From the NCBI RefSeq assembly GCF_006345805.1, contig NC_043023.1:18662001-18726000 (forward strand): DNA of 64,000 bases, read 5' to 3'. Source of the DNA: Octopus sinensis. Taxonomy: Eukaryota. Under the pieces are notes generated by a model that did not search any database, had not been told where the DNA came from, and worked only from the letters and a program-made list of their open reading frames with translations. The translations under genes were made by a program, and so were the position numbers. Below are positions 142 through 36,200 of the stretch, piece by piece (positions within the stretch are counted from its first letter, which is position 1; each line of letters starts with the position of its first letter).

Positions 142-213
142 ATTTTTAAGTGGGAATAAAATCACGGAAATCAATGCGGACACATTCCGAAATCTGTTCA
201 GTTTAGCCTATAT
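142..213 (+). CDS. LRR exon 1 ([23 protein letters not shown])
   Basis: ttgcag|72 nt|gtaagt, phase 2-2, LRR consensus. Confidence 0.9.
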
Positions 214-3200
214 GTAAGTTGAATCAGTCTTTTTTTACAGTATTTCCTTGACGATATTTCTAAATCCGTGGAGGCGCAATGGCCCAGTGGTTTGGGCAGC
301 GGACTCGCGGTCGTAGGATCGCGGTTTCGATTCCCAGACCGGGCGTTGTGAGTGTTTATTGAGCGAAAACACTTAAAGCTCCACGAGACTCCAGCAGGAG
401 ATGGTGGTGATCACTGCTGTACTTTTTCACCACAAATTTCTCTCACTCTTACTTCCTGTTTCTGCTGTACCTGTATTTCAAAGGGCCGGCCTTGTCACTC
501 TCTCTGTCACGCTGAATATCCCCGAGAACTACGTTAAGGGTGCACGTGTCTGTGGAGTGCTCAGCCACTTACACGTTAATTTCACGAGCAGGCTGTTCCG
601 TTGATCGGATCAACCGGAACCCTCGTCGTCGTAACCGACGGAGTGCTTCCCTCCATCCATTTCTAAATCTGCAATCCATTTCCATCCTTCATTTTCAGCT
701 CTCGCACTCGTCTTTCCAACGATAAGTTTTATTGCTTGTGAATCTGTGTGTATGAGTGAGGGCCCATTTCTTAACCCCTTACCCGGCAGAAACGAATATA
801 TGCGTTTTGACACAAATCGTTTTTTTCTATCTCTGGCGAGTTAACTCGTCAAAAGATAGACTCGCCAAAATCGACAGCAAACGAGTTCCTTCGTCTATTA
901 TAAACTCTTTTTTGACATATACGAGTATATTCGCTCACTTTATACGTCTGGCAGTGACGATTTCTGCCACCTTTCGCTTGAGTAAGGCATTGAAGACCGA
1001 GTACGATTTAGTCACCTGGAGACAGTCGAAGGGTTGGAAGGCACATTTTATGAATAGAAGTATTCACTTTGTTTTTACGTTGTTTTTTTACGTTGTTTTT
1101 TTTATACCTTTATATTATAACCCCACCATGTCGAGCTCTGATGATGATAGCGATTATGAAGCTTCTCTTGGAGGGTTGGATACATCTGATGAGAGTGAAA
1201 GTTCGTCAGAAGAGTTTTGAAGTAATAAAATCAACAGAAGTAAACAATCATGTTTTGATCATTCATTCTAAATTTGGAAAATAAGATAACCAAATAAAAT
1301 AACATGATTTTTTGTAAAAATAATATGATTTATGAAAAAAACGGGTTAACTCGTTTCTGCCCAAAGCGGTAATTTAAAATCAATATTATTGAATTAAAAT
1401 TCATAATAAATAAGGTTTGAAATATACCTCGAAATCACCATTCAAAACAGTGAAATAAAACAATTAAAAAATATGTCTGAAAAAATACATTTATTTTCAA
1501 AATAATTGTTGGGTAAGGGGTTAAATACAGGATTTATGAGGGCTTGATACTTCATGGAAGTGTATGTTTCTGTATATACTCTTACTCTTTTACTGGTTTT
1601 AGTCATTTGACTGCAGCCATGCTGGAGCACCGCCTTTAATCGAGCAACTCGACCCCGGGACTTATTCTTTTATAAGCCCAGTACTTATTATATCGGTCTC
1701 TTTTGCCGAACCGCTAAGTAACGGGGACATAAACACACCAGCATCGGTTGTCAAGCAATGCTAGGGGGACAAACACAGACACACAAACACACACACACAT
1801 ATATATATATACATATATACGACGGGATTCTTTCAGTTTCCGTCTACCAAATCCACTCACAAGGCTTTGGTCGGCCCGAGGCTATAGCAGAAGACACTTG
1901 CCCAAGGTGCCACGCAGTGGGACTGAACCCGGAACCATGTGGTTAGTAAACAAGTTACTTACCACACAGCCACTCCTGCGCCTATATGTGTAAAATATAT
2001 AGAGAGTAGCAAACAATTTAGAGAAAACAAATTATTTAAAGTAGATAGAGAGAGATTTTACAGGGAACTCGTTAAACAACAAATAAATGTTGAGCAATCG
2101 CCCAAGAAAGAGGATATGGAAAATTTCTGGAGTACGATATGGGAAACAGAACAACAACATAATGAAGATGTAGAATAGATTAAGGGACAAGAGACACTCC
2201 TGAAAAATAAAGAAGTACAGGAATGGGAAGATATTCAAAAGGAGGGAGTCACCGGGAATAGTCGACCTCGGCGGAACTTGAACTCAGAACGTAACGGCAA
2301 ACGAAATATCTATTTCTTTACTACCCAAAAGGAGCTAAACACGGGGGGGGGACAAACAAGGACAGACACACGGATTAAGTCGATTACATCGACCCCAGTG
2401 CGTAACTGGTACTTAATTTATCGACCTCGAAAGGATGAAAGGTAAAGTGGACCTCGACGGAATTTGAACTCATAACGTAACGGCAGACGAAATACCTATT
2501 TCTTTACTACCCACAAGGTCTAAACACGGGGGGGGGACAAACAAGGACAGACACACGGATTAAGTCGATTACATCGACCCCAGTGCGTAACTGGTACTTA
2601 ATTTATCGACCTCGAAAGGATGAAAGGCAAAGTGGACCTCGACGGAATTTGAACTCAGAACGTAACTGCAGACGAAATACCACTAAACATTTCGCCCGGT
2701 GTGCTAACGTTTCTGCCAGTCTTCCAGCAAATATTTGTTTCGCCATAATATTTTGTTATACAACTTCTGGATCAAACAGCCAGTTGATACACATGGAGAT
2801 ATGTCATCAGCATACAACGAAGTCATGAAAAACCCAGAAAATAGCCCAGATCAGGCGTAGGAGCGGCTGTGTGGTAAGTAGCTTGCTTACCAACCACATG
2901 ATTCCGGGTTCAGTCCCACTGCGTGGCACCTTGGGCAAGTGTCTTCTACTATAGCCTCGGACCGACCAATGCCATGTGAGTGGATTTGTTAGGCGGAAAC
3001 TGAAAGAAGCCCGTCGTATATATGTATATATATATGTGTGTGTGTGTGTGTGTTTGTGGGTTTGTGTTTGTCCCCCCCAACATCGCTTGACAACCGATGC
3101 TGGTGTGTTTACGTCCCCGTAACTTAGCGGTTCGGCAAAAGAGACCGATAGAATAAGTACTAGGCTTACAAAGAATAAGTCCTGTGGTCGATTTGCTCGA

Positions 3201-33200: not shown

Positions 33201-36200
33201 GGACACCAAATCTTATTAAATCGTTGAATTGGTTGGCTGGTAGAAATTTAAAAAGGCATTTGTAACTTATTCTAAAATGTCTCAAACAGATTCAGGTAAT
33301 GGCAAAAAAGGATTGGGAACGTCAGGGGAACAGGTCTGGCTCGGCAGATTCCCCAGTGTGTCACAGGCTGGACCCGGTCGTCCTCCATCCACTGTGGTCA
33401 AACAATCTTCAAGGAAAAGCAAAATAGACATCCTTTGAATTTTGGCGGCTGGAATGTGCGCACACGTCTCGATGATAATTTCAATAAGAGGCCAGAAAGG
33501 TGTACTGCACTTATTGCATGTGAGCTCAAGAAATATTTCCTTGATATAGTTGCGCTCTCGGAAATTGGTCTCTCTGGTAAGGGTCAAGTAACTGAACCTA
33601 CTTATGGATATACTATCTTTTGGAGAGGCATGCCCAAGGGTCAGCGTAGAGAATCTGGTGTTGGATTTGCTCTCAAGAATTCATAAGTATCCTCCATTGG
33701 AGAGCTTCCAAGTGGTATATCTGAACGAACCATGTCATGCCATATTAAACTGACAAAAGGTAGGTTTCTTCTCGTTGTCAGTATTTATGTACCAACAATG
33801 TTTCATTCTGATGAAACTGCAGGACAATTCTATTGAGGAAAGTACCAATTTCTGACAAGATGGTCATATTGGGAGATTTCAACGTAGCAATTGGAAATGA
33901 CTACGTTTCATGGCCTGTTATAGGCCGACATGAGATTGGAAAATGTAATAAAAATGGAGTAGCTCTTTTGACGTTTTGTACTGAGAATAATCTGTTTGTT
34001 TCCAACACACAGTTTAAACAGAAAAATAAATATAATATCGCTTGGATACACCCATATCTAAGGACGGGCAGCTCATAGATTATATTTTGATCAGAAAGCG
34101 TGATATGAGAGATGTTTCTGGGGTTCGGGCCATGAGAAGAGCAGAGAGCCATCGTCTAGAGCATGGAAAAATAAATTTTTCAATAATACTTAAAAGTCGA
34201 TAGGCTGGTCATAAGGCACCCAAAAAGTTAAACGCTGCAAACTTCAAATTACCAAGCAACTTGCAAAGATTCCAGGATGCTATAACAAGTATCAATCTTG
34301 ACTCAAACAATCTATGGGAAGATTTGAAAACAAAAGTATTTCAGACTACAAGTGGGATTTAAGGCGCGTAAGTCCAGTGATTGGTTCTCAGACAAATCAG
34401 CAGAAATTCACAATCTACTTTCAGAAAAACCAAACTTAGGCAATACACTTGAACCCCAACTCAAACAAAGCTTACAAAAAGCTGAAAGGGAAAGTGCAGA
34501 CTGATCTAAGGAAAATCAAACAGGAATAGTGAAATGATTGGGCAAAAGGGGCACAAGAAACAACTAACAGAAATGACGCCAAGGGTTTATAATCTTATAT
34601 TAAGAAGGTATATTGCCCCAAAACTTCAATAGCTCCAGTGAGAACTGCAAATGGGCGTTTACTTTTGACTGACATCGCTTTTATTCACAAGCGCTGGGTA
34701 GAACATTTTGTGGATGTTACGATCGAGGTGGACCACAACGATCTTTATGTGTGCATAGTTTGTGACAGACCACGCCATTCTTTTGCCGGGTTCAAATCTG
34801 ATTTGCGGACCGATCAAAAACGAACCTCCACTAACTATTCGGCCTATATGACTATGCATTCCTTACTTTACATTCCTTACCTTACATCTAATTTTCTTCG
34901 CCATAGTATTTAATATTTCATCACAAATATTTTCTATATGTTTGTTATCAATTCGATTTCTTGTTTACAGATATCTGAGTGACAATAACATCACATATAT
35001 TCAACGTGGTATCTTCGAAAATCTTCCAAATCTACAAAGATTGTGAGTTAGGTCGCTTTTTTCGCACTTTTTAAATAACCATATATCTAGATCTTAATAT
35101 CTTCTTTTATTTTCCCTATCTCTTTTTGTTTCTATCTAACATTCATGCACTCTCTCCACAGTTTTCTCTGAGTGCATCTGAATGTGTTTGTGAGAGAGTG
35201 TGGCTGTATGATCTTCTTTCTCACTTTCTCCTCATGTTCTTGTTATCTTGGTAATCGTAAGATTTTTCTTCTTTACTTTATCTTCCTTGTTTTCGAAACG
35301 TTCGTCTAATATTCAAATACTCATTATTCAACTACATTTCATCGTCTGCTTCTTTCTTCCAGAGTCTTGCGCAACAGCGGAATAAAAAACTATGAGGATG
35401 GTGCGTTCTTATTCCTTCCCAGTGTAAATTACATGTATGTACAACAAACCTTTCTTTATTGGAAAACCAAAACTCTTTGTAAAACTAAAATCATAAAAAA
35501 GATGTCATCAAATTCTCAGTTATTTAATACATATTTCTTTACTACCCACAAGGGGCTAAACACAGACGGGACAAATAAGGACAGACAAACGGATTAAGTC
35601 GATTACATCGACCCCAGTGAACTGGTACTTAATTTATCGACCCCGAAAGGATGAAAGGCAAAGTCGACCTCGGCGGAATTTGAACTCAGAACGTAGCGGC
35701 AGACAAAATACGGCAACGCATTTCGCCCGGCGTGCTAACGTTTCTGCCAGCCCGCCGCCTTCAGTTATTTAATACAGTTAACAATGAATAGCGATGCGCA
35801 TTTTAAAGTTTAGTGAGGTCTACGTTAATGCCTCACTGTTCTAAGTTTAGATCGTCCATGATTCATCTTGCTTCAAAGCTTTCCTCTGATTGTGACAATT
35901 GAACGCGGGTATTTTGGTTATCACTATCGTGTAGATGGATTATTCGGTGTTAGCGTCACAAACACACACACGACATGGGGAAATATTGGAAGCACTCCGT
36001 CGGTTTCGACGACGAGGGTTCCGGTTGATCCGAATCAACGGAACAGCCTGCTCGTGAAATTAACGTGTAAGTGGCTGAGCACTCCACAGACACGTGTACC
36101 CTTAACGTAGTTCTCGGGGATATTCAGCGTGACACAGAGAGTGACAAGGCCGGCCCTTTGAAATACAGGTACAACAGAAACAGGAAGTAAGGGTGAGAGA

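What the first reader, a model, noticed from the sequence alone, without database searches (positions are those of the whole stretch)
142..35042. Array of 13 interchangeable single-LRR exons: a possible combinatorial-splicing receptor ectodomain
Seen: every exon is exactly 72 nt and phase 2-2. Each ends in AT, CT or TT, and each (and the LRRCT exon) begins with A, G or T. Any junction therefore encodes I, M, L or F at the conserved LRR leucine and never a stop, so any subset of exons splices into an intact solenoid (up to 2^13 subsets in theory). Residues at the predicted concave-face positions vary strongly (F/Y/S/D/N before L; S-G, G-H, S-S, S-D, R-T, G-T, R-G, E-K after it). Established: one-LRR-per-exon genes are common, and LRR diversification underlies the lamprey VLRs. 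Inference: this could be an RNA-level diversity generator for a sensory or immune adhesion GPCR; splicing was not observed here.
Basis: partly seen in the sequence, partly recalled or inferred. Interest (0 to 1): 0.85.

Follow-up and report, generated by a model that had tools for sequence, protein, structure and literature searches.

The report
Octopus gene with tandem LRR exons
A real run of fourteen 72-base exons, each coding one leucine-rich repeat, lies in an octopus-specific adhesion-receptor-like gene; this exon layout is the standard one for such repeats, mix-and-match splicing is annotated for sister genes but unproven here, and this copy seems to have lost its seven-helix membrane half.

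Summary
There are 13 exons of exactly 72 nt at 142-35042, plus a 14th at 35363-35434. All have AG/GT borders and phase-2 introns, and all 105 forward junctions encode L, I, M or F.

The window is the near-identical counterpart (about 97% nt) of O. vulgaris OX597842.1:13.39-13.47 Mb, where the array has 18 such exons. It is the orthologue of O. bimaculoides LOC106878254. The gene belongs to the octopus-specific "ADGRG6/GPR126-like" expansion: LRRNT, LRRs, LRRCT, a Cys-rich module, GAIN/GPS.

The 72-nt phase-2 single-LRR exon is a known architecture (gonadotropin receptors, Slit, brown-algal ROCO). Frame-neutral skipping follows from tandem duplication of an exon-plus-intron unit.

Alternative use of LRR exons is annotated in paralogues: 13 RefSeq isoforms in 24-aa steps, all ordered subsets, and similar O. 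vulgaris isoforms. Some of these models have mid-exon hybrid junctions that suggest cross-mapping.

For this locus only two discordant gene models exist. In the vulgaris/sinensis lineage the ORF stops inside TM1, and no TM2-7 exons were found.

LRR exons evolve fast, especially at concave-face codons.

Verdict: a new member of a known kind. A combinatorial repertoire is possible but unshown.

The parts
142..213 (+). LRR exon E1 (72 nt, phase 2): [23 protein letters not shown]|AT. It is the fifth LRR exon of the full array in the O. vulgaris counterpart.
4622..4693 (+). LRR exon E2: [23 protein letters not shown]|AT. The framework Leu at position 2 is replaced by Thr (Met in O. vulgaris).
5946..6017 (+). 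LRR exon E3: [23 protein letters not shown]|AT
7641..7712 (+). LRR exon E4: [23 protein letters not shown]|CT
11069..11140 (+). LRR exon E5: [23 protein letters not shown]|CT
12691..12762 (+). LRR exon E6: [23 protein letters not shown]|CT
16568..16639 (+). LRR exon E7: [23 protein letters not shown]|CT
18261..18332 (+). LRR exon E8: [23 protein letters not shown]|CT. The LRR asparagine is replaced by Leu, as in O. vulgaris.
20059..20130 (+). LRR exon E9: [23 protein letters not shown]|CT (begins with G)
23489..23560 (+). LRR exon E10: [23 protein letters not shown]|CT. The asparagine is replaced by Ile, a change conserved in O. bimaculoides.
27389..27460 (+). LRR exon E11: [23 protein letters not shown]|TT
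30811..30882 (+). LRR exon E12: [23 protein letters not shown]|CT. Only 57% aa identity to its O. bimaculoides orthologue. A SINE-like repeat sits about 25 nt (+23/+26) after the donor.
34971..35042 (+). LRR exon E13: [23 protein letters not shown]|TT. One of the four LRR exons used in the O. vulgaris model P0178.
35363..35434 (+). Its donor is GTATGT.
38428..38585 (+). LRRCT cap exon. It begins with T: (I)[22 protein letters not shown]...MKYMQCQ
43394..43485 (+). First exon of a Cys-rich module that resembles a three-finger (Ly6/uPAR or activin-receptor-like) domain: [31 protein letters not shown]
46411..46594 (+). Second exon of the Cys-rich module: PVCESKLS...[16 protein letters not shown]
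49098..49329 (+). GAIN-region exon. The window alone has a 1-nt deletion (A4 to A3 near 49131) compared with O. vulgaris and O. bimaculoides. It shifts the frame unless an AG acceptor at 49107-49108 is used (exon then starts at 49109).
49942..50109 (+). GAIN-region exon ([12 protein letters not shown]...GNNENQAK) with a likely GC donor (AAG|GCAATG)
52374..52487 (+). GAIN-region exon ([38 protein letters not shown]). Present in O. vulgaris model P0178.
52829..52957 (+). GAIN-region exon ([43 protein letters not shown])
54076..54222 (+). GPS exon (…[12 protein letters not shown])
55612..55707 (+). TM1 exon up to an in-frame TAA at 55705-55707. The stop is created by a 1-nt deletion relative to O. 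bimaculoides and is shared with O. vulgaris.

Best explanation
The window carries the last 14 of 18 single-LRR exons, plus the LRRCT, Cys-rich, GAIN/GPS and TM1 exons, of one member of the octopus-specific LRR-bearing 'ADGRG6/GPR126-like' adhesion-GPCR expansion.

The array grew by tandem duplication of a unit of at least 360 nt made of one exon and its intron flanks. The introns were later swollen by SINEs, satellites and other repeats. Each copy inherits the ancestral LRR exon format of 72 nt with phase-2 introns, so every exon is symmetric and any skipping keeps the frame. That property is a by-product of how the array arose, not a device.

Binding diversity is mainly encoded in the germline. 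The family holds many paralogues and many repeats per gene, and change concentrates at concave-face codons.

The default product most likely includes most or all repeats in genomic order (inferred). Occasional skipping of single LRR cassette exons, as annotated for paralogues, probably adds a handful of length variants rather than a Dscam-scale repertoire (inferred).

In the vulgaris/sinensis lineage this copy ends inside TM1. Its product, if made, would be an LRR-GAIN ectodomain with a short hydrophobic tail, not a seven-helix receptor.
For: Exon anatomy and junction arithmetic.

Duplication unit: similarity among copies runs at least 140 nt upstream and about 130 nt downstream of the exons. 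There are exactly 14 copies and no decayed ones.

Gene identity:
- Collinear with O. bimaculoides LOC106878254 at 84-90% nt.
- Collinear with O. vulgaris OX597842.1 at about 97% nt.
- Pfam LRR_8 at 1e-112 for the window translation; GPS at 1.7e-14 and a weak GAIN hit for orthologue P0178.
- The family is described as an octopus-specific aGPCR expansion with LRRs, positive selection, and expression in suckers, axial nerve cord and skin (PMC6408891).

Known architecture: 72-bp phase-2 LRR exons with alternative splicing in brown-algal ROCO genes, and phase-2 introns in gonadotropin receptors (PMC11378527). LRR exon modularity is described as a precondition for alternative splicing, with Slit and NLRP3 as examples (PMC6642158).

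Selection:
- Concave codons give dN 0.58 against dS 0.45; framework codons give dN 0.12.
- Window versus O. bimaculoides: LRR exons give omega about 1.4, non-LRR exons 0.35.
- In paralogue L002, near-identical units differ almost only at codons 1, 3, 4 and 6.

Limited skipping: paralogue isoforms vary only among the first few exons, and the 3' core is constant.

Consecutive inclusion: the older O. bimaculoides model XP_014782914.1 joins nine LRR modules plus a leading partial one that match E5-E14 in order, with a single module where the window has E7 and E8.

Truncation: the TAA in TM1 is shared by the window and O. vulgaris, and no TM2-7 exons were found within 8-10 kb downstream. O. bimaculoides has its TM2 exon 2.4 kb downstream of TM1.
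Against: - No RNA data for this locus were available. 'Mostly constitutive' is inferred, not shown.
- The only O. vulgaris model for the locus (P0178) uses 4 of the 18 LRR exons and joins exons 36 kb apart. If that model rests on transcripts, skipping here is massive rather than occasional.
- RefSeq lists 13 isoforms for one paralogue, which is more than 'a handful'.
- A block at +1 to +60 of the downstream intron is 2-3 times better conserved among copies (pi about 0.1) than the exon (0.28) or the distal intron (0.2-0.3). This could mark a shared splicing-control element.
Confidence: 0.6

Rival explanations
1. One reading: the symmetric LRR exons are cassette exons under regulated or stochastic choice. 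One gene then yields a large combinatorial repertoire of solenoids that differ in length and binding face, an RNA-level diversity generator for sensing or self/non-self recognition.
For: - All junctions are frame-safe and restore the hydrophobic core residue.
- RefSeq isoform series come in exact 24-aa steps and are order-preserving subsets of genomic exons in two O. sinensis paralogues.
- An O. vulgaris gene, annotated with a pipeline that adds isoforms only from PASA transcript assemblies, has isoforms of 489, 465 and 441 aa (PMC10700109).
- The O. vulgaris model of this locus joins non-adjacent exons. AlphaFold models that 4-LRR product as a regular solenoid with pLDDT 90-98 across the junction.
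- A conserved intronic block follows each donor.
- Concave-face positions are hypervariable.
Against: - No transcript was observed for this locus.
- Annotated variation is confined to the first few exons; the 3' exons are constant.
- Five of the 13 isoforms carry mid-exon hybrid modules, as expected when reads from near-identical exons or haplotigs are cross-mapped.
- P0178 could be an artefact of ab initio prediction on a repeat-masked assembly.
- No complementarity between flanks of the Dscam docking/selector kind was found.
- The intronic block is displaced or lost at some intact exons: E12 in the window and E13 in O. bimaculoides.
- The same exon format exists in genes that are mostly spliced constitutively (PMC11378527, PMC6642158).
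Confidence: 0.15
2. The locus is a dead or dying gene in the vulgaris/sinensis lineage. The intact look of the LRR exons reflects recent loss of function rather than current use.
For: - A premature TAA in TM1 is shared by two species.
- TM2-7 exons are undetectable, and a LINE and a SINE lie in the downstream region.
- The window has an extra frameshift in a GAIN exon.
- The current O. bimaculoides RefSeq splits the orthologue into fragments that lack the LRR part.
- No Logan or other transcript-derived protein for this locus turned up, although the search appears to cap hit length.
Against: - All 14 LRR exons (18 in O. vulgaris) keep open frames and canonical splice sites.
- No indel has arisen in 1008 nt of LRR exons.
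- Non-LRR exons show purifying selection against O. bimaculoides, with omega 0.35.
- The ORF up to the TAA still encodes a complete ectodomain with a GPS motif.
- Several paralogues are annotated as 7TM-less LRR plus Cys-rich proteins, so a 7TM-less product may be functional.
- The window-only frameshift lies in an A-run and may be an assembly error.
Confidence: 0.15
3. All LRR exons are strictly constitutive. Every annotated exon-skipping isoform in the family is an artefact of aligning short reads, or transcripts of other copies, to arrays of near-identical exons.
For: - Hybrid modules with junctions in the middle of exons, at the same place within a stretch shared by several exons.
- Two O. 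sinensis scaffolds carry what look like uncollapsed copies of one gene, with identical exons.
- Exon flanks in that paralogue are about 97% identical.
Against: - Two independent pipelines in two species give the same kind of 24-aa-step series.
- Some junctions, such as e to g or a to e, join exon types with clearly different sequences.
- Single LRR-exon skipping is experimentally established in other genes with this architecture: LGR5 lacking exon 5 (PMC3203099) and NLRP3 lacking exon 5 (PMC6642158).
Confidence: 0.1

Closest known systems
Octopus-specific adhesion-GPCR expansion ('group 3' of Ritschard et al. 2019, PMC6408891)
   Same: Same gene family by naming and relatives (ADGRG2/4/6- and GPR126-like). 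Members are clustered on the chromosome. LRRs were found in 5 of 22 members. Positive selection and expression in suckers, axial nerve cord and skin are reported.
   Different: That paper does not describe the one-LRR-per-exon arrays, the isoform series or the Cys-rich module. This locus has lost its 7TM in the vulgaris/sinensis lineage.
Brown-algal LRR-ROCO genes (PMC11378527; Zambounis et al. 2012 as cited there)
   Same: The exon format is identical: 72 bp, phase 2, one LRR per exon. They also show tandem exon duplication or shuffling, positive selection on the concave face, and up to nine alternative transcripts with different LRR combinations.
   Different: These are cytosolic LRR-ROC-COR GTPases of algae. 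They are unrelated in the rest of the protein and arose independently.
Glycoprotein-hormone receptors and LGR4-6, including LGR5 lacking exon 5
   Same: GPCRs with an LRR ectodomain built from similar-sized single-LRR exons. All introns are phase 2 (PMC11378527). In-frame skipping of single LRR exons is documented for LGR5 exons 5 and 8 (PMC3203099).
   Different: Rhodopsin-class 7TM, no GAIN/GPS, few and stable repeats, conserved orthologues, and no lineage-specific array growth.
Slit genes and NLRP3 (LRR exon modularity; PMC6642158)
   Same: Strict exon modularity of LRRs is described as the precondition for alternative splicing. Heterogeneous Slit mRNAs and an NLRP3 isoform lacking exon 5 are reported.
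   Different: These are a secreted guidance cue and a cytosolic sensor. Only one or a few regulated skipping events are known, not a repertoire.
Arthropod Dscam1
   Same: Tandem arrays of duplicated, frame-compatible exons that encode one binding module each.
   Different: Dscam uses mutually exclusive choice, with one exon per cluster and constant length, enforced by docking/selector RNA pairing. Here the annotated isoforms vary in length, and no flank complementarity was found.
Lamprey and hagfish VLR
   Same: LRR modules with hypervariable concave faces are used to build diverse receptors.
   Different: VLR diversity is somatic DNA assembly from flanking cassettes that are not spliceable exons (my own knowledge). 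Here every module is a canonical exon in one collinear gene.
Vertebrate ADGRA2/ADGRA3 (GPR124/125)
   Same: Adhesion GPCRs with N-terminal LRRs. A precomputed weak GAIN_ADGRA3 hit is listed for paralogue P0108.
   Different: They have only a few LRRs plus Ig and hormone-receptor domains, no Cys-rich three-finger-like module and no array expansion (my own knowledge, not tested).

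Membership tests
Typical 24-residue extracellular LRR solenoid | Tandem LxxLxLxxNxL-type repeats with a 24-residue period | tested here: met
   Pfam LRR_8 at E = 1e-112 with 10 stretches on the spliced translation. Framework positions L2, N5, I7, I10, F15, L18 and L21 are nearly invariant. The AlphaFold model of orthologue P0178 has a beta-strand every 24 residues with pLDDT 85-98.
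Typical 24-residue extracellular LRR solenoid | Cysteine-capped N- and C-terminal flanks (LRRNT, LRRCT) | tested here: inconclusive
   An LRRCT-like exon with four Cys lies at 38428-38585 and is conserved in all relatives, but it gave no Pfam LRRCT hit. The LRRNT exon lies upstream of the window. Relatives give weak LRRNT hits (E = 3e-4 and 1e-2).
Modular one-LRR-per-exon genes (GPHR/LGR, Slit, brown-algal ROCO) | Each repeat on its own exon of about 72 nt, with all introns in the same phase (2) | tested here: met
   14 of 14 exons are 72 nt with phase-2 introns. The same holds in O. vulgaris (18 exons) and in the O. sinensis paralogue.
Modular one-LRR-per-exon genes (GPHR/LGR, Slit, brown-algal ROCO) | Transcripts that skip individual LRR exons in frame | not testable with these tools
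   No RNA data for this locus. Paralogues have annotated isoforms only. The two orthologue models disagree.
Adhesion GPCR | GAIN domain ending in a GPS cleavage motif | tested here: met
   The GPS exon at 54076-54222 reads ...[12 protein letters not shown]. Pfam GPS scores 1.7e-14 (P0178) and 7.7e-14 (P0142). Pfam GAIN is weak at E = 0.0018. AlphaFold confidence for this region is low.
Adhesion GPCR | Secretin-like seven-transmembrane domain (7tm_2) following the GPS | tested here: not met
   The TM1 exon ends in a TAA at 55705-55707, shared with O. vulgaris. tblastn with the 7TM regions of three relatives finds no TM2-7 exon in window 55.7-64 kb or in 10 kb downstream in O. vulgaris. The O. 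bimaculoides orthologue keeps TM1-TM2. The gene is derived from an aGPCR but is not an intact one here.
Dscam-type mutually exclusive exon clusters | One exon chosen per cluster (constant length), with docking/selector RNA complementarity | tested here: not met
   Paralogue isoforms differ in length by multiples of 24 aa. RNAduplex energies between the downstream and upstream flanks equal those of shuffled controls, -16.6 against -16.2 kcal/mol.
VLR-type somatic LRR assembly | An incomplete germline gene plus flanking LRR cassettes without splice sites | tested here: not met
   All modules are collinear exons with canonical AG/GT sites in one transcription unit.
Ly6/uPAR (three-finger) domain | About 90 residues with 8-10 spaced Cys and a C-terminal CCxxxxCN | tested here: inconclusive
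   The sequence shows ...[17 protein letters not shown] names a relative 'ly6/PLAUR domain-containing protein 1-like'. phmmer against PDB gives weak hits to the ACVR1 ectodomain (E = 0.004) and to LYPD1 (E = 0.014). There is no Pfam hit. AlphaFold pLDDT is 35-57.

The most novel reading that the evidence does not exclude
Across the octopus-specific LRR and aGPCR-derived family, cells choose different ordered subsets of LRR cassette exons, stochastically or by cell type. Together with dozens of fast-evolving paralogues, this would give a large RNA-level repertoire of recognition surfaces in suckers, skin and nerve cord. It would be a cephalopod counterpart of Dscam or protocadherin diversity, built from LRRs. 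The conserved block of about 60 nt after each donor would be part of the control.
Probability: 0.12. Interest if true: 0.8.

Novelty: new member of a known kind. Interest (0 to 1): 0.45.

Why it matters
The octopus-specific adhesion-GPCR expansion is one of the few gene-family signatures tied to suckers, skin and the arm nerve cord, and its ligands and logic are unknown.

This analysis shows three things about its ectodomains. They are arrays of single-LRR exons that grow by tandem duplication. They diversify at the concave face. In public annotations they already appear as series of isoforms that differ by whole repeats.

That gives a concrete and cheap hypothesis to test with existing Iso-Seq data: does splicing add to germline diversity in this family?

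The work also flags an annotation problem. The three species' annotations model this one locus in three incompatible ways. Published counts of LRR-bearing members and of intact receptors in the family are therefore probably unreliable.

If splicing turns out to be constitutive, the locus is simply a textbook case of LRR exon duplication.

Tried and rejected
1. Docking/selector-type RNA pairing between the conserved flanks. RNAduplex on all downstream-by-upstream flank pairs was indistinguishable from shuffles, so this was rejected.

2. Hidden decayed LRR pseudo-exons. An nhmmer unit profile found only the 14 copies.

3. The conserved 'polypyrimidine + TAG/CAG' about 27 nt after each donor as a functional acceptor. 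The AG is absent in E8 and E10, and the block is missing or displaced at intact exons E12 (window) and E13 (O. bimaculoides), so this was not pursued.

4. Whole intron flanks being more conserved than exons. This is only partly true. The +1 to +60 block and the -36 to -12 block are conserved, and the distal flanks match the exon's third-position diversity.

5. Protein searches found no product of this locus. Every hit listed was shorter than about 1.75 times the query, so I infer a length limit. Absence there is not evidence of absence. The orthologue's product (P0178) surfaced only in one search and was recognised by tblastn.

6. Fetching the paralogue loci for P0001 failed (not the longest isoform). 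Fetching P0108 also failed (its gene range is 119 kb).

The model of P0178 is confident only for the LRR part, so no fold search was run on the Cys-rich or GAIN parts.

8. A search for the TM2 exon by alignment to O. bimaculoides was ambiguous. A SINE sits at the expected place.

9. ARAGORN called none of the SINE-like repeats as tRNA-like.

Full report
**1. The observation.**
A scan for AG...72 nt...GT windows with an open frame at offset 1 and an LRR-like start finds 72-nt exons on the + strand at 142, 4622, 5946, 7641, 11069, 12691, 16568, 18261, 20059, 23489, 27389, 30811 and 34971. A 14th lies at 35363-35434.

Every exon has a pyrimidine tract plus AG in front. The donors are GTAAGT (11 exons), GTGAGT (2) and GTATGT (1). 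Each exon reads as 1 nt + 23 codons + 2 nt, so every intron is phase 2.

The last two bases are AT, CT or TT. The first base is A or G, and T for the LRRCT exon at 38428. All 105 forward junctions give L, I, M or F and none gives a stop.

A profile of the unit finds these copies and nothing else on either strand. The spliced translation scores Pfam LRR_8 at E = 1e-112.

**2. What gene it is.**
Downstream exons were placed by tblastn with relatives and by reading the splice sites:

| Exon | Coordinates |
|---|---|
| LRRCT | 38428-38585 |
| Cys-rich module, two exons | 43394-43485, 46411-46594 |
| GAIN region | 49098-49329, 49942-50109, 52374-52487, 52829-52957 |
| GPS (…[12 protein letters not shown]) | 54076-54222 |
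| TM1 | from 55612 |

The window is collinear with O. bimaculoides CM046629.1:4.087-4.114 Mb (LOC106878254; 84-90% nt in introns). It is also collinear, at about 97% nt, with O. vulgaris OX597842.1:13,385,770-13,471,213. The window therefore comes from a very close relative of O. vulgaris. O. sinensis is my inference.

In O. vulgaris the locus has the LRRNT exon and 18 LRR exons of 72 nt. The window's E1-E14 are numbers 5-18.

Sources call the products 'adhesion G-protein coupled receptor G6-like' or 'GPR126-like'. This matches the octopus-specific adhesion-GPCR expansion ('group 3') of Ritschard et al. 2019. That group is related to human ADGRG2/4/6 and scallop GPR126. LRRs were found in 5 of its 22 members, the genes are co-localised and positively selected, and they are expressed in axial nerve cord, suckers and skin (PMC6408891).

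Pfam finds GPS (E about 1e-14) and a weak GAIN hit in the orthologues. The Cys-rich module gives only weak three-finger-type matches: ACVR1 ectodomain at E = 0.004 and LYPD1 at E = 0.014.

**3. This copy is not an intact GPCR.**
Compared with O. bimaculoides, the TM1 exon has a 1-nt deletion that creates a TAA at 55705-55707. The same sequence is present in O. vulgaris, whose annotated protein P0178 ends at exactly that point, '...CLILI'.

tblastn with the 7TM regions of three relatives finds no TM2-7 exon in the remaining 8 kb of the window or in 10 kb downstream in O. vulgaris. O. bimaculoides has its TM2 exon 2.4 kb after TM1. At the expected place the window has a SINE, and the alignment there is ambiguous. 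A non-LTR retrotransposon also sits just downstream.

The window alone carries a further 1-nt deletion (A4 to A3) near 49131 in a GAIN exon. It may be an assembly error. An AG acceptor at 49107-49108 (exon then starting at 49109, 11 nt downstream) would restore the frame.

Against simple decay:
- All LRR exons are intact in both species.
- The non-LRR exons show purifying selection against O. bimaculoides (dN 0.108, dS 0.312, omega 0.35).

**4. How the array arose.**
Alignment of the units shows similarity well beyond the exons. It runs at least 140 nt upstream and about 130 nt downstream in many copies. The duplicated unit was therefore an exon plus its intron, at least 360 nt long.

The present introns of 0.3-4.4 kb are filled with other material: a repeated SINE-like element of about 380 bp, a 140-bp satellite, microsatellites, and DNA-transposon and LINE remnants.

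The symmetric phase is inherited from the unit that was copied. [quoted passage not shown] Those genes also show exon shuffling, positive selection on the concave face and up to nine alternative transcripts. The same paper notes the all-phase-2 introns of gonadotropin receptors (PMC11378527).

Exon modularity of LRRs as 'a precondition for alternative splicing' has been reported for human families, including Slit and NLRP3 (PMC6642158). LGR5 variants that lack exon 5 or exon 8 are known (PMC3203099).

**5. Sequence evolution.**
Among E1-E8 the figures are as follows:

| Codon class | dN | dS |
|---|---|---|
| Framework | 0.12 | 0.47 |
| Presumed concave face (1, 3, 4, 22, 23) | 0.58 | 0.45 |

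Between the window and O. bimaculoides, exons E11-E14 give dN 0.138 and dS 0.100. The sample is small (S = 53 sites). E12 is only 57% identical in protein, although the flanking introns are about 86-89% identical.

In the O. sinensis paralogue L002, six units have upstream flanks with pi = 0.03. Their exons differ almost only at codons 1, 3, 4 and 6 of xLxxNx, with pi of 0.3-0.6 there and 0 at most other codons. This is a clear signature of diversification at the binding face.

Within the window's units the best-conserved piece is not the exon. It is the first 60 nt or so of the downstream intron, with pi about 0.1. The exon has pi 0.28 and the distal intron 0.2-0.3. This block could be a shared splicing element. 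However, it is displaced by a SINE at E12 and absent at the O. bimaculoides E13, and both exons look intact. I leave it unexplained.

**6. Evidence on splicing.**
No RNA data for this locus could be reached. The gene models disagree.

- The older O. bimaculoides RefSeq model (XP_014782914.1, P0142) joins nine LRR modules plus a leading partial one in genomic order. They correspond to E5-E14, with a single module where the window has E7 and E8.
- The current O. bimaculoides annotation starts at the LRRCT exon and splits off the GPS-7TM part.
- The O. vulgaris model P0178 uses the LRRNT exon, LRR exons 2 and 4, and then E13 and E14. It skips 14 of the 18 LRR exons.

The O. vulgaris annotation combined Iso-Seq and RNA-seq assemblies, protein alignments and ab initio predictions made on a repeat-masked assembly (PMC10700109). 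I cannot tell whether P0178 reflects a transcript or reflects masking of the repeated exons.

For paralogues the public annotations do show LRR-cassette variation:
- One O. sinensis gene (scaffold VCDQ01004985.1, L002) has 12 genomic 72-nt LRR exons and 13 RefSeq isoforms of 409, 385, 361 and 337 aa.
- Eight of those isoforms are order-preserving subsets: abdefghi, bdefghi, bcefghi, befghi, aefghi, cefghi, efghi and aeghi. The 3' core g-h-i is constant, and exons j and k are never used.
- A second O. sinensis gene has isoforms of 525, 501 and 477 aa with the same behaviour.
- An O. vulgaris gene has isoforms of 489, 465 and 441 aa. In that pipeline, alternative forms come from PASA transcript assemblies.

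Caveats:
- Five of the 13 O. sinensis isoforms contain hybrid modules. In these, the first half of one exon is joined to the second half of another, at one point inside a stretch the exons share. That pattern is expected from cross-mapping among near-identical exons or uncollapsed haplotigs.
- The isoforms are models, not sequenced molecules.

Other observations:
- A test for complementarity between downstream and upstream flanks, as in Dscam-type competing structures, was negative.
- The isoforms vary in length, so the pattern is inclusion or skipping, not mutually exclusive choice.
- AlphaFold models the 4-LRR P0178 product as a regular solenoid, with pLDDT 90-98 across the junction of non-adjacent exons. 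This is consistent with skipped forms being foldable, but it is no more than that.

**7. Verdict.**
- What is there: a tandem array of single-LRR exons in a fast-evolving member of an octopus-specific family derived from adhesion GPCRs. The array was made by duplication of an exon-plus-intron unit.
- How it most likely works: diversity is mainly germline (paralogues, repeats, concave-face substitutions). Some in-frame cassette skipping probably adds length variants. At this locus the product, if any, lacks the 7TM domain.
It is unshown, is likely far smaller than 2^13, and rests on a property that is generic to this exon type.
- Novelty: a new member of a known kind.
- Interest: moderate. It lies mostly in the cheap, decisive test with existing long-read data and in the annotation problem it exposes.

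Noticed in passing
window 55612-55707 (TAA at 55705-55707); L003 around 75412-75445: A premature stop inside the TM1 exon is caused by a 1-nt deletion relative to O. bimaculoides and is shared by the window and O. vulgaris. No TM2-7 exons were found downstream. In this lineage the 'receptor' seems to have lost its 7TM half.
   Followed up: partly
window about 49131 (exon 49098-49329): A window-only 1-nt deletion in an A-run (A4 to A3) shifts the frame of a GAIN exon. O. vulgaris and O. bimaculoides are in frame. It could be an assembly error or a real lesion. An AG acceptor at 49107-49108 (exon starting at 49109) would rescue the frame.
   Followed up: partly
window, +1 to +60 after the donors of E1-E8 and E10 (for example 214-273, 4694-4753, 16640-16699): An intronic block of about 60 nt (GTAAGTTGAATCAGTCTTCTTTTATAGTATTTCATTGACGATATATTTCTAAATGTGTAAT) is better conserved among the copies (pi about 0.1) than the exons themselves (0.28). 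It contains an acceptor-like pyrimidine tract plus TAG/CAG about 27 nt after the donor. Its function is unknown, and it is displaced or absent at some intact exons.
   Followed up: partly
L003 (O. vulgaris) gene 10001-75444; L001 (O. bimaculoides): Three annotations model this one locus in incompatible ways: 4 of 18 LRR exons in O. vulgaris; nine consecutive LRR modules plus a leading partial one in the old O. bimaculoides RefSeq; and no LRR exons, with the gene split in two, in the current O. bimaculoides RefSeq. Counts of LRR-bearing or intact members of this family are probably unreliable.
   Followed up: partly
L002 (O. sinensis VCDQ01004985.1) 11129-31738: The paralogue array is a two-exon super-repeat: exons of the 'ISRIEKEMFQGLHNLEK' type alternate with exons of the 'ISTIKEGxFTGLSNLK' type, each with its own near-identical flanks. 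Variation is confined to codons 1, 3, 4 and 6. Two intact exons (j and k) are used in none of the 13 isoforms.
   Followed up: partly
window 18261-18332 (E8), 23489-23560 (E10), 4622-4693 (E2): Three repeats break the LRR framework: Asn to Leu in E8, Asn to Ile in E10 (conserved as far as O. bimaculoides), and Leu2 to Thr in E2 (Met in O. vulgaris). It is unknown whether these exons are skipped more often or form irregular turns.
   Followed up: no
window 20807-23040: A 140-bp satellite of 16 copies at 96% identity lies inside the intron between E9 and E10.
   Followed up: no
window 267-646, 16901-17279, 19451-19833, 28685-29064, 35992-36373 (-), 40704-41070, 43535-43911, 48389-48778: At least eight copies of a SINE-like repeat of about 380 bp (90-95% identical to copies in O. 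bimaculoides) fill the introns. ARAGORN calls none of them tRNA-like. A second short repeat ('...ggcgcaggagtggctgtgtggtaagtagcttgcttacc...') also recurs.
   Followed up: no
window 56311-59277 (- strand): Non-LTR retrotransposon remnant: a 688-aa ORF with an AP-endonuclease domain (Exo_endo_phos, E = 1.6e-11), followed by a 297-aa ORF. It is inserted just downstream of the TM1 exon.
   Followed up: partly
window 25039-25897 (- strand): Tc1/mariner-like DNA-transposon remnant (HTH_23 at 1.6e-8 and DDE_3 at 1.6e-4) in the intron between E10 and E11.
   Followed up: no
window 42442-43266; 60028-60864; 4006-4336; 49440-49833: Very long microsatellites: (ATT)275, (ACAT)209, (TTC)110 and (AGA)129. 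The first ends 128 nt before the first Cys-rich exon.
   Followed up: no
window 50107-50115: The GAIN exon that ends ...CAAGCAAAG is followed by GCAATG, a likely GC-AG intron. The O. vulgaris model splices here (…NENQAK|TQNF…). The current O. bimaculoides RefSeq model (P0121) reads through at the equivalent place, while the older model (P0142) splices there.
   Followed up: partly
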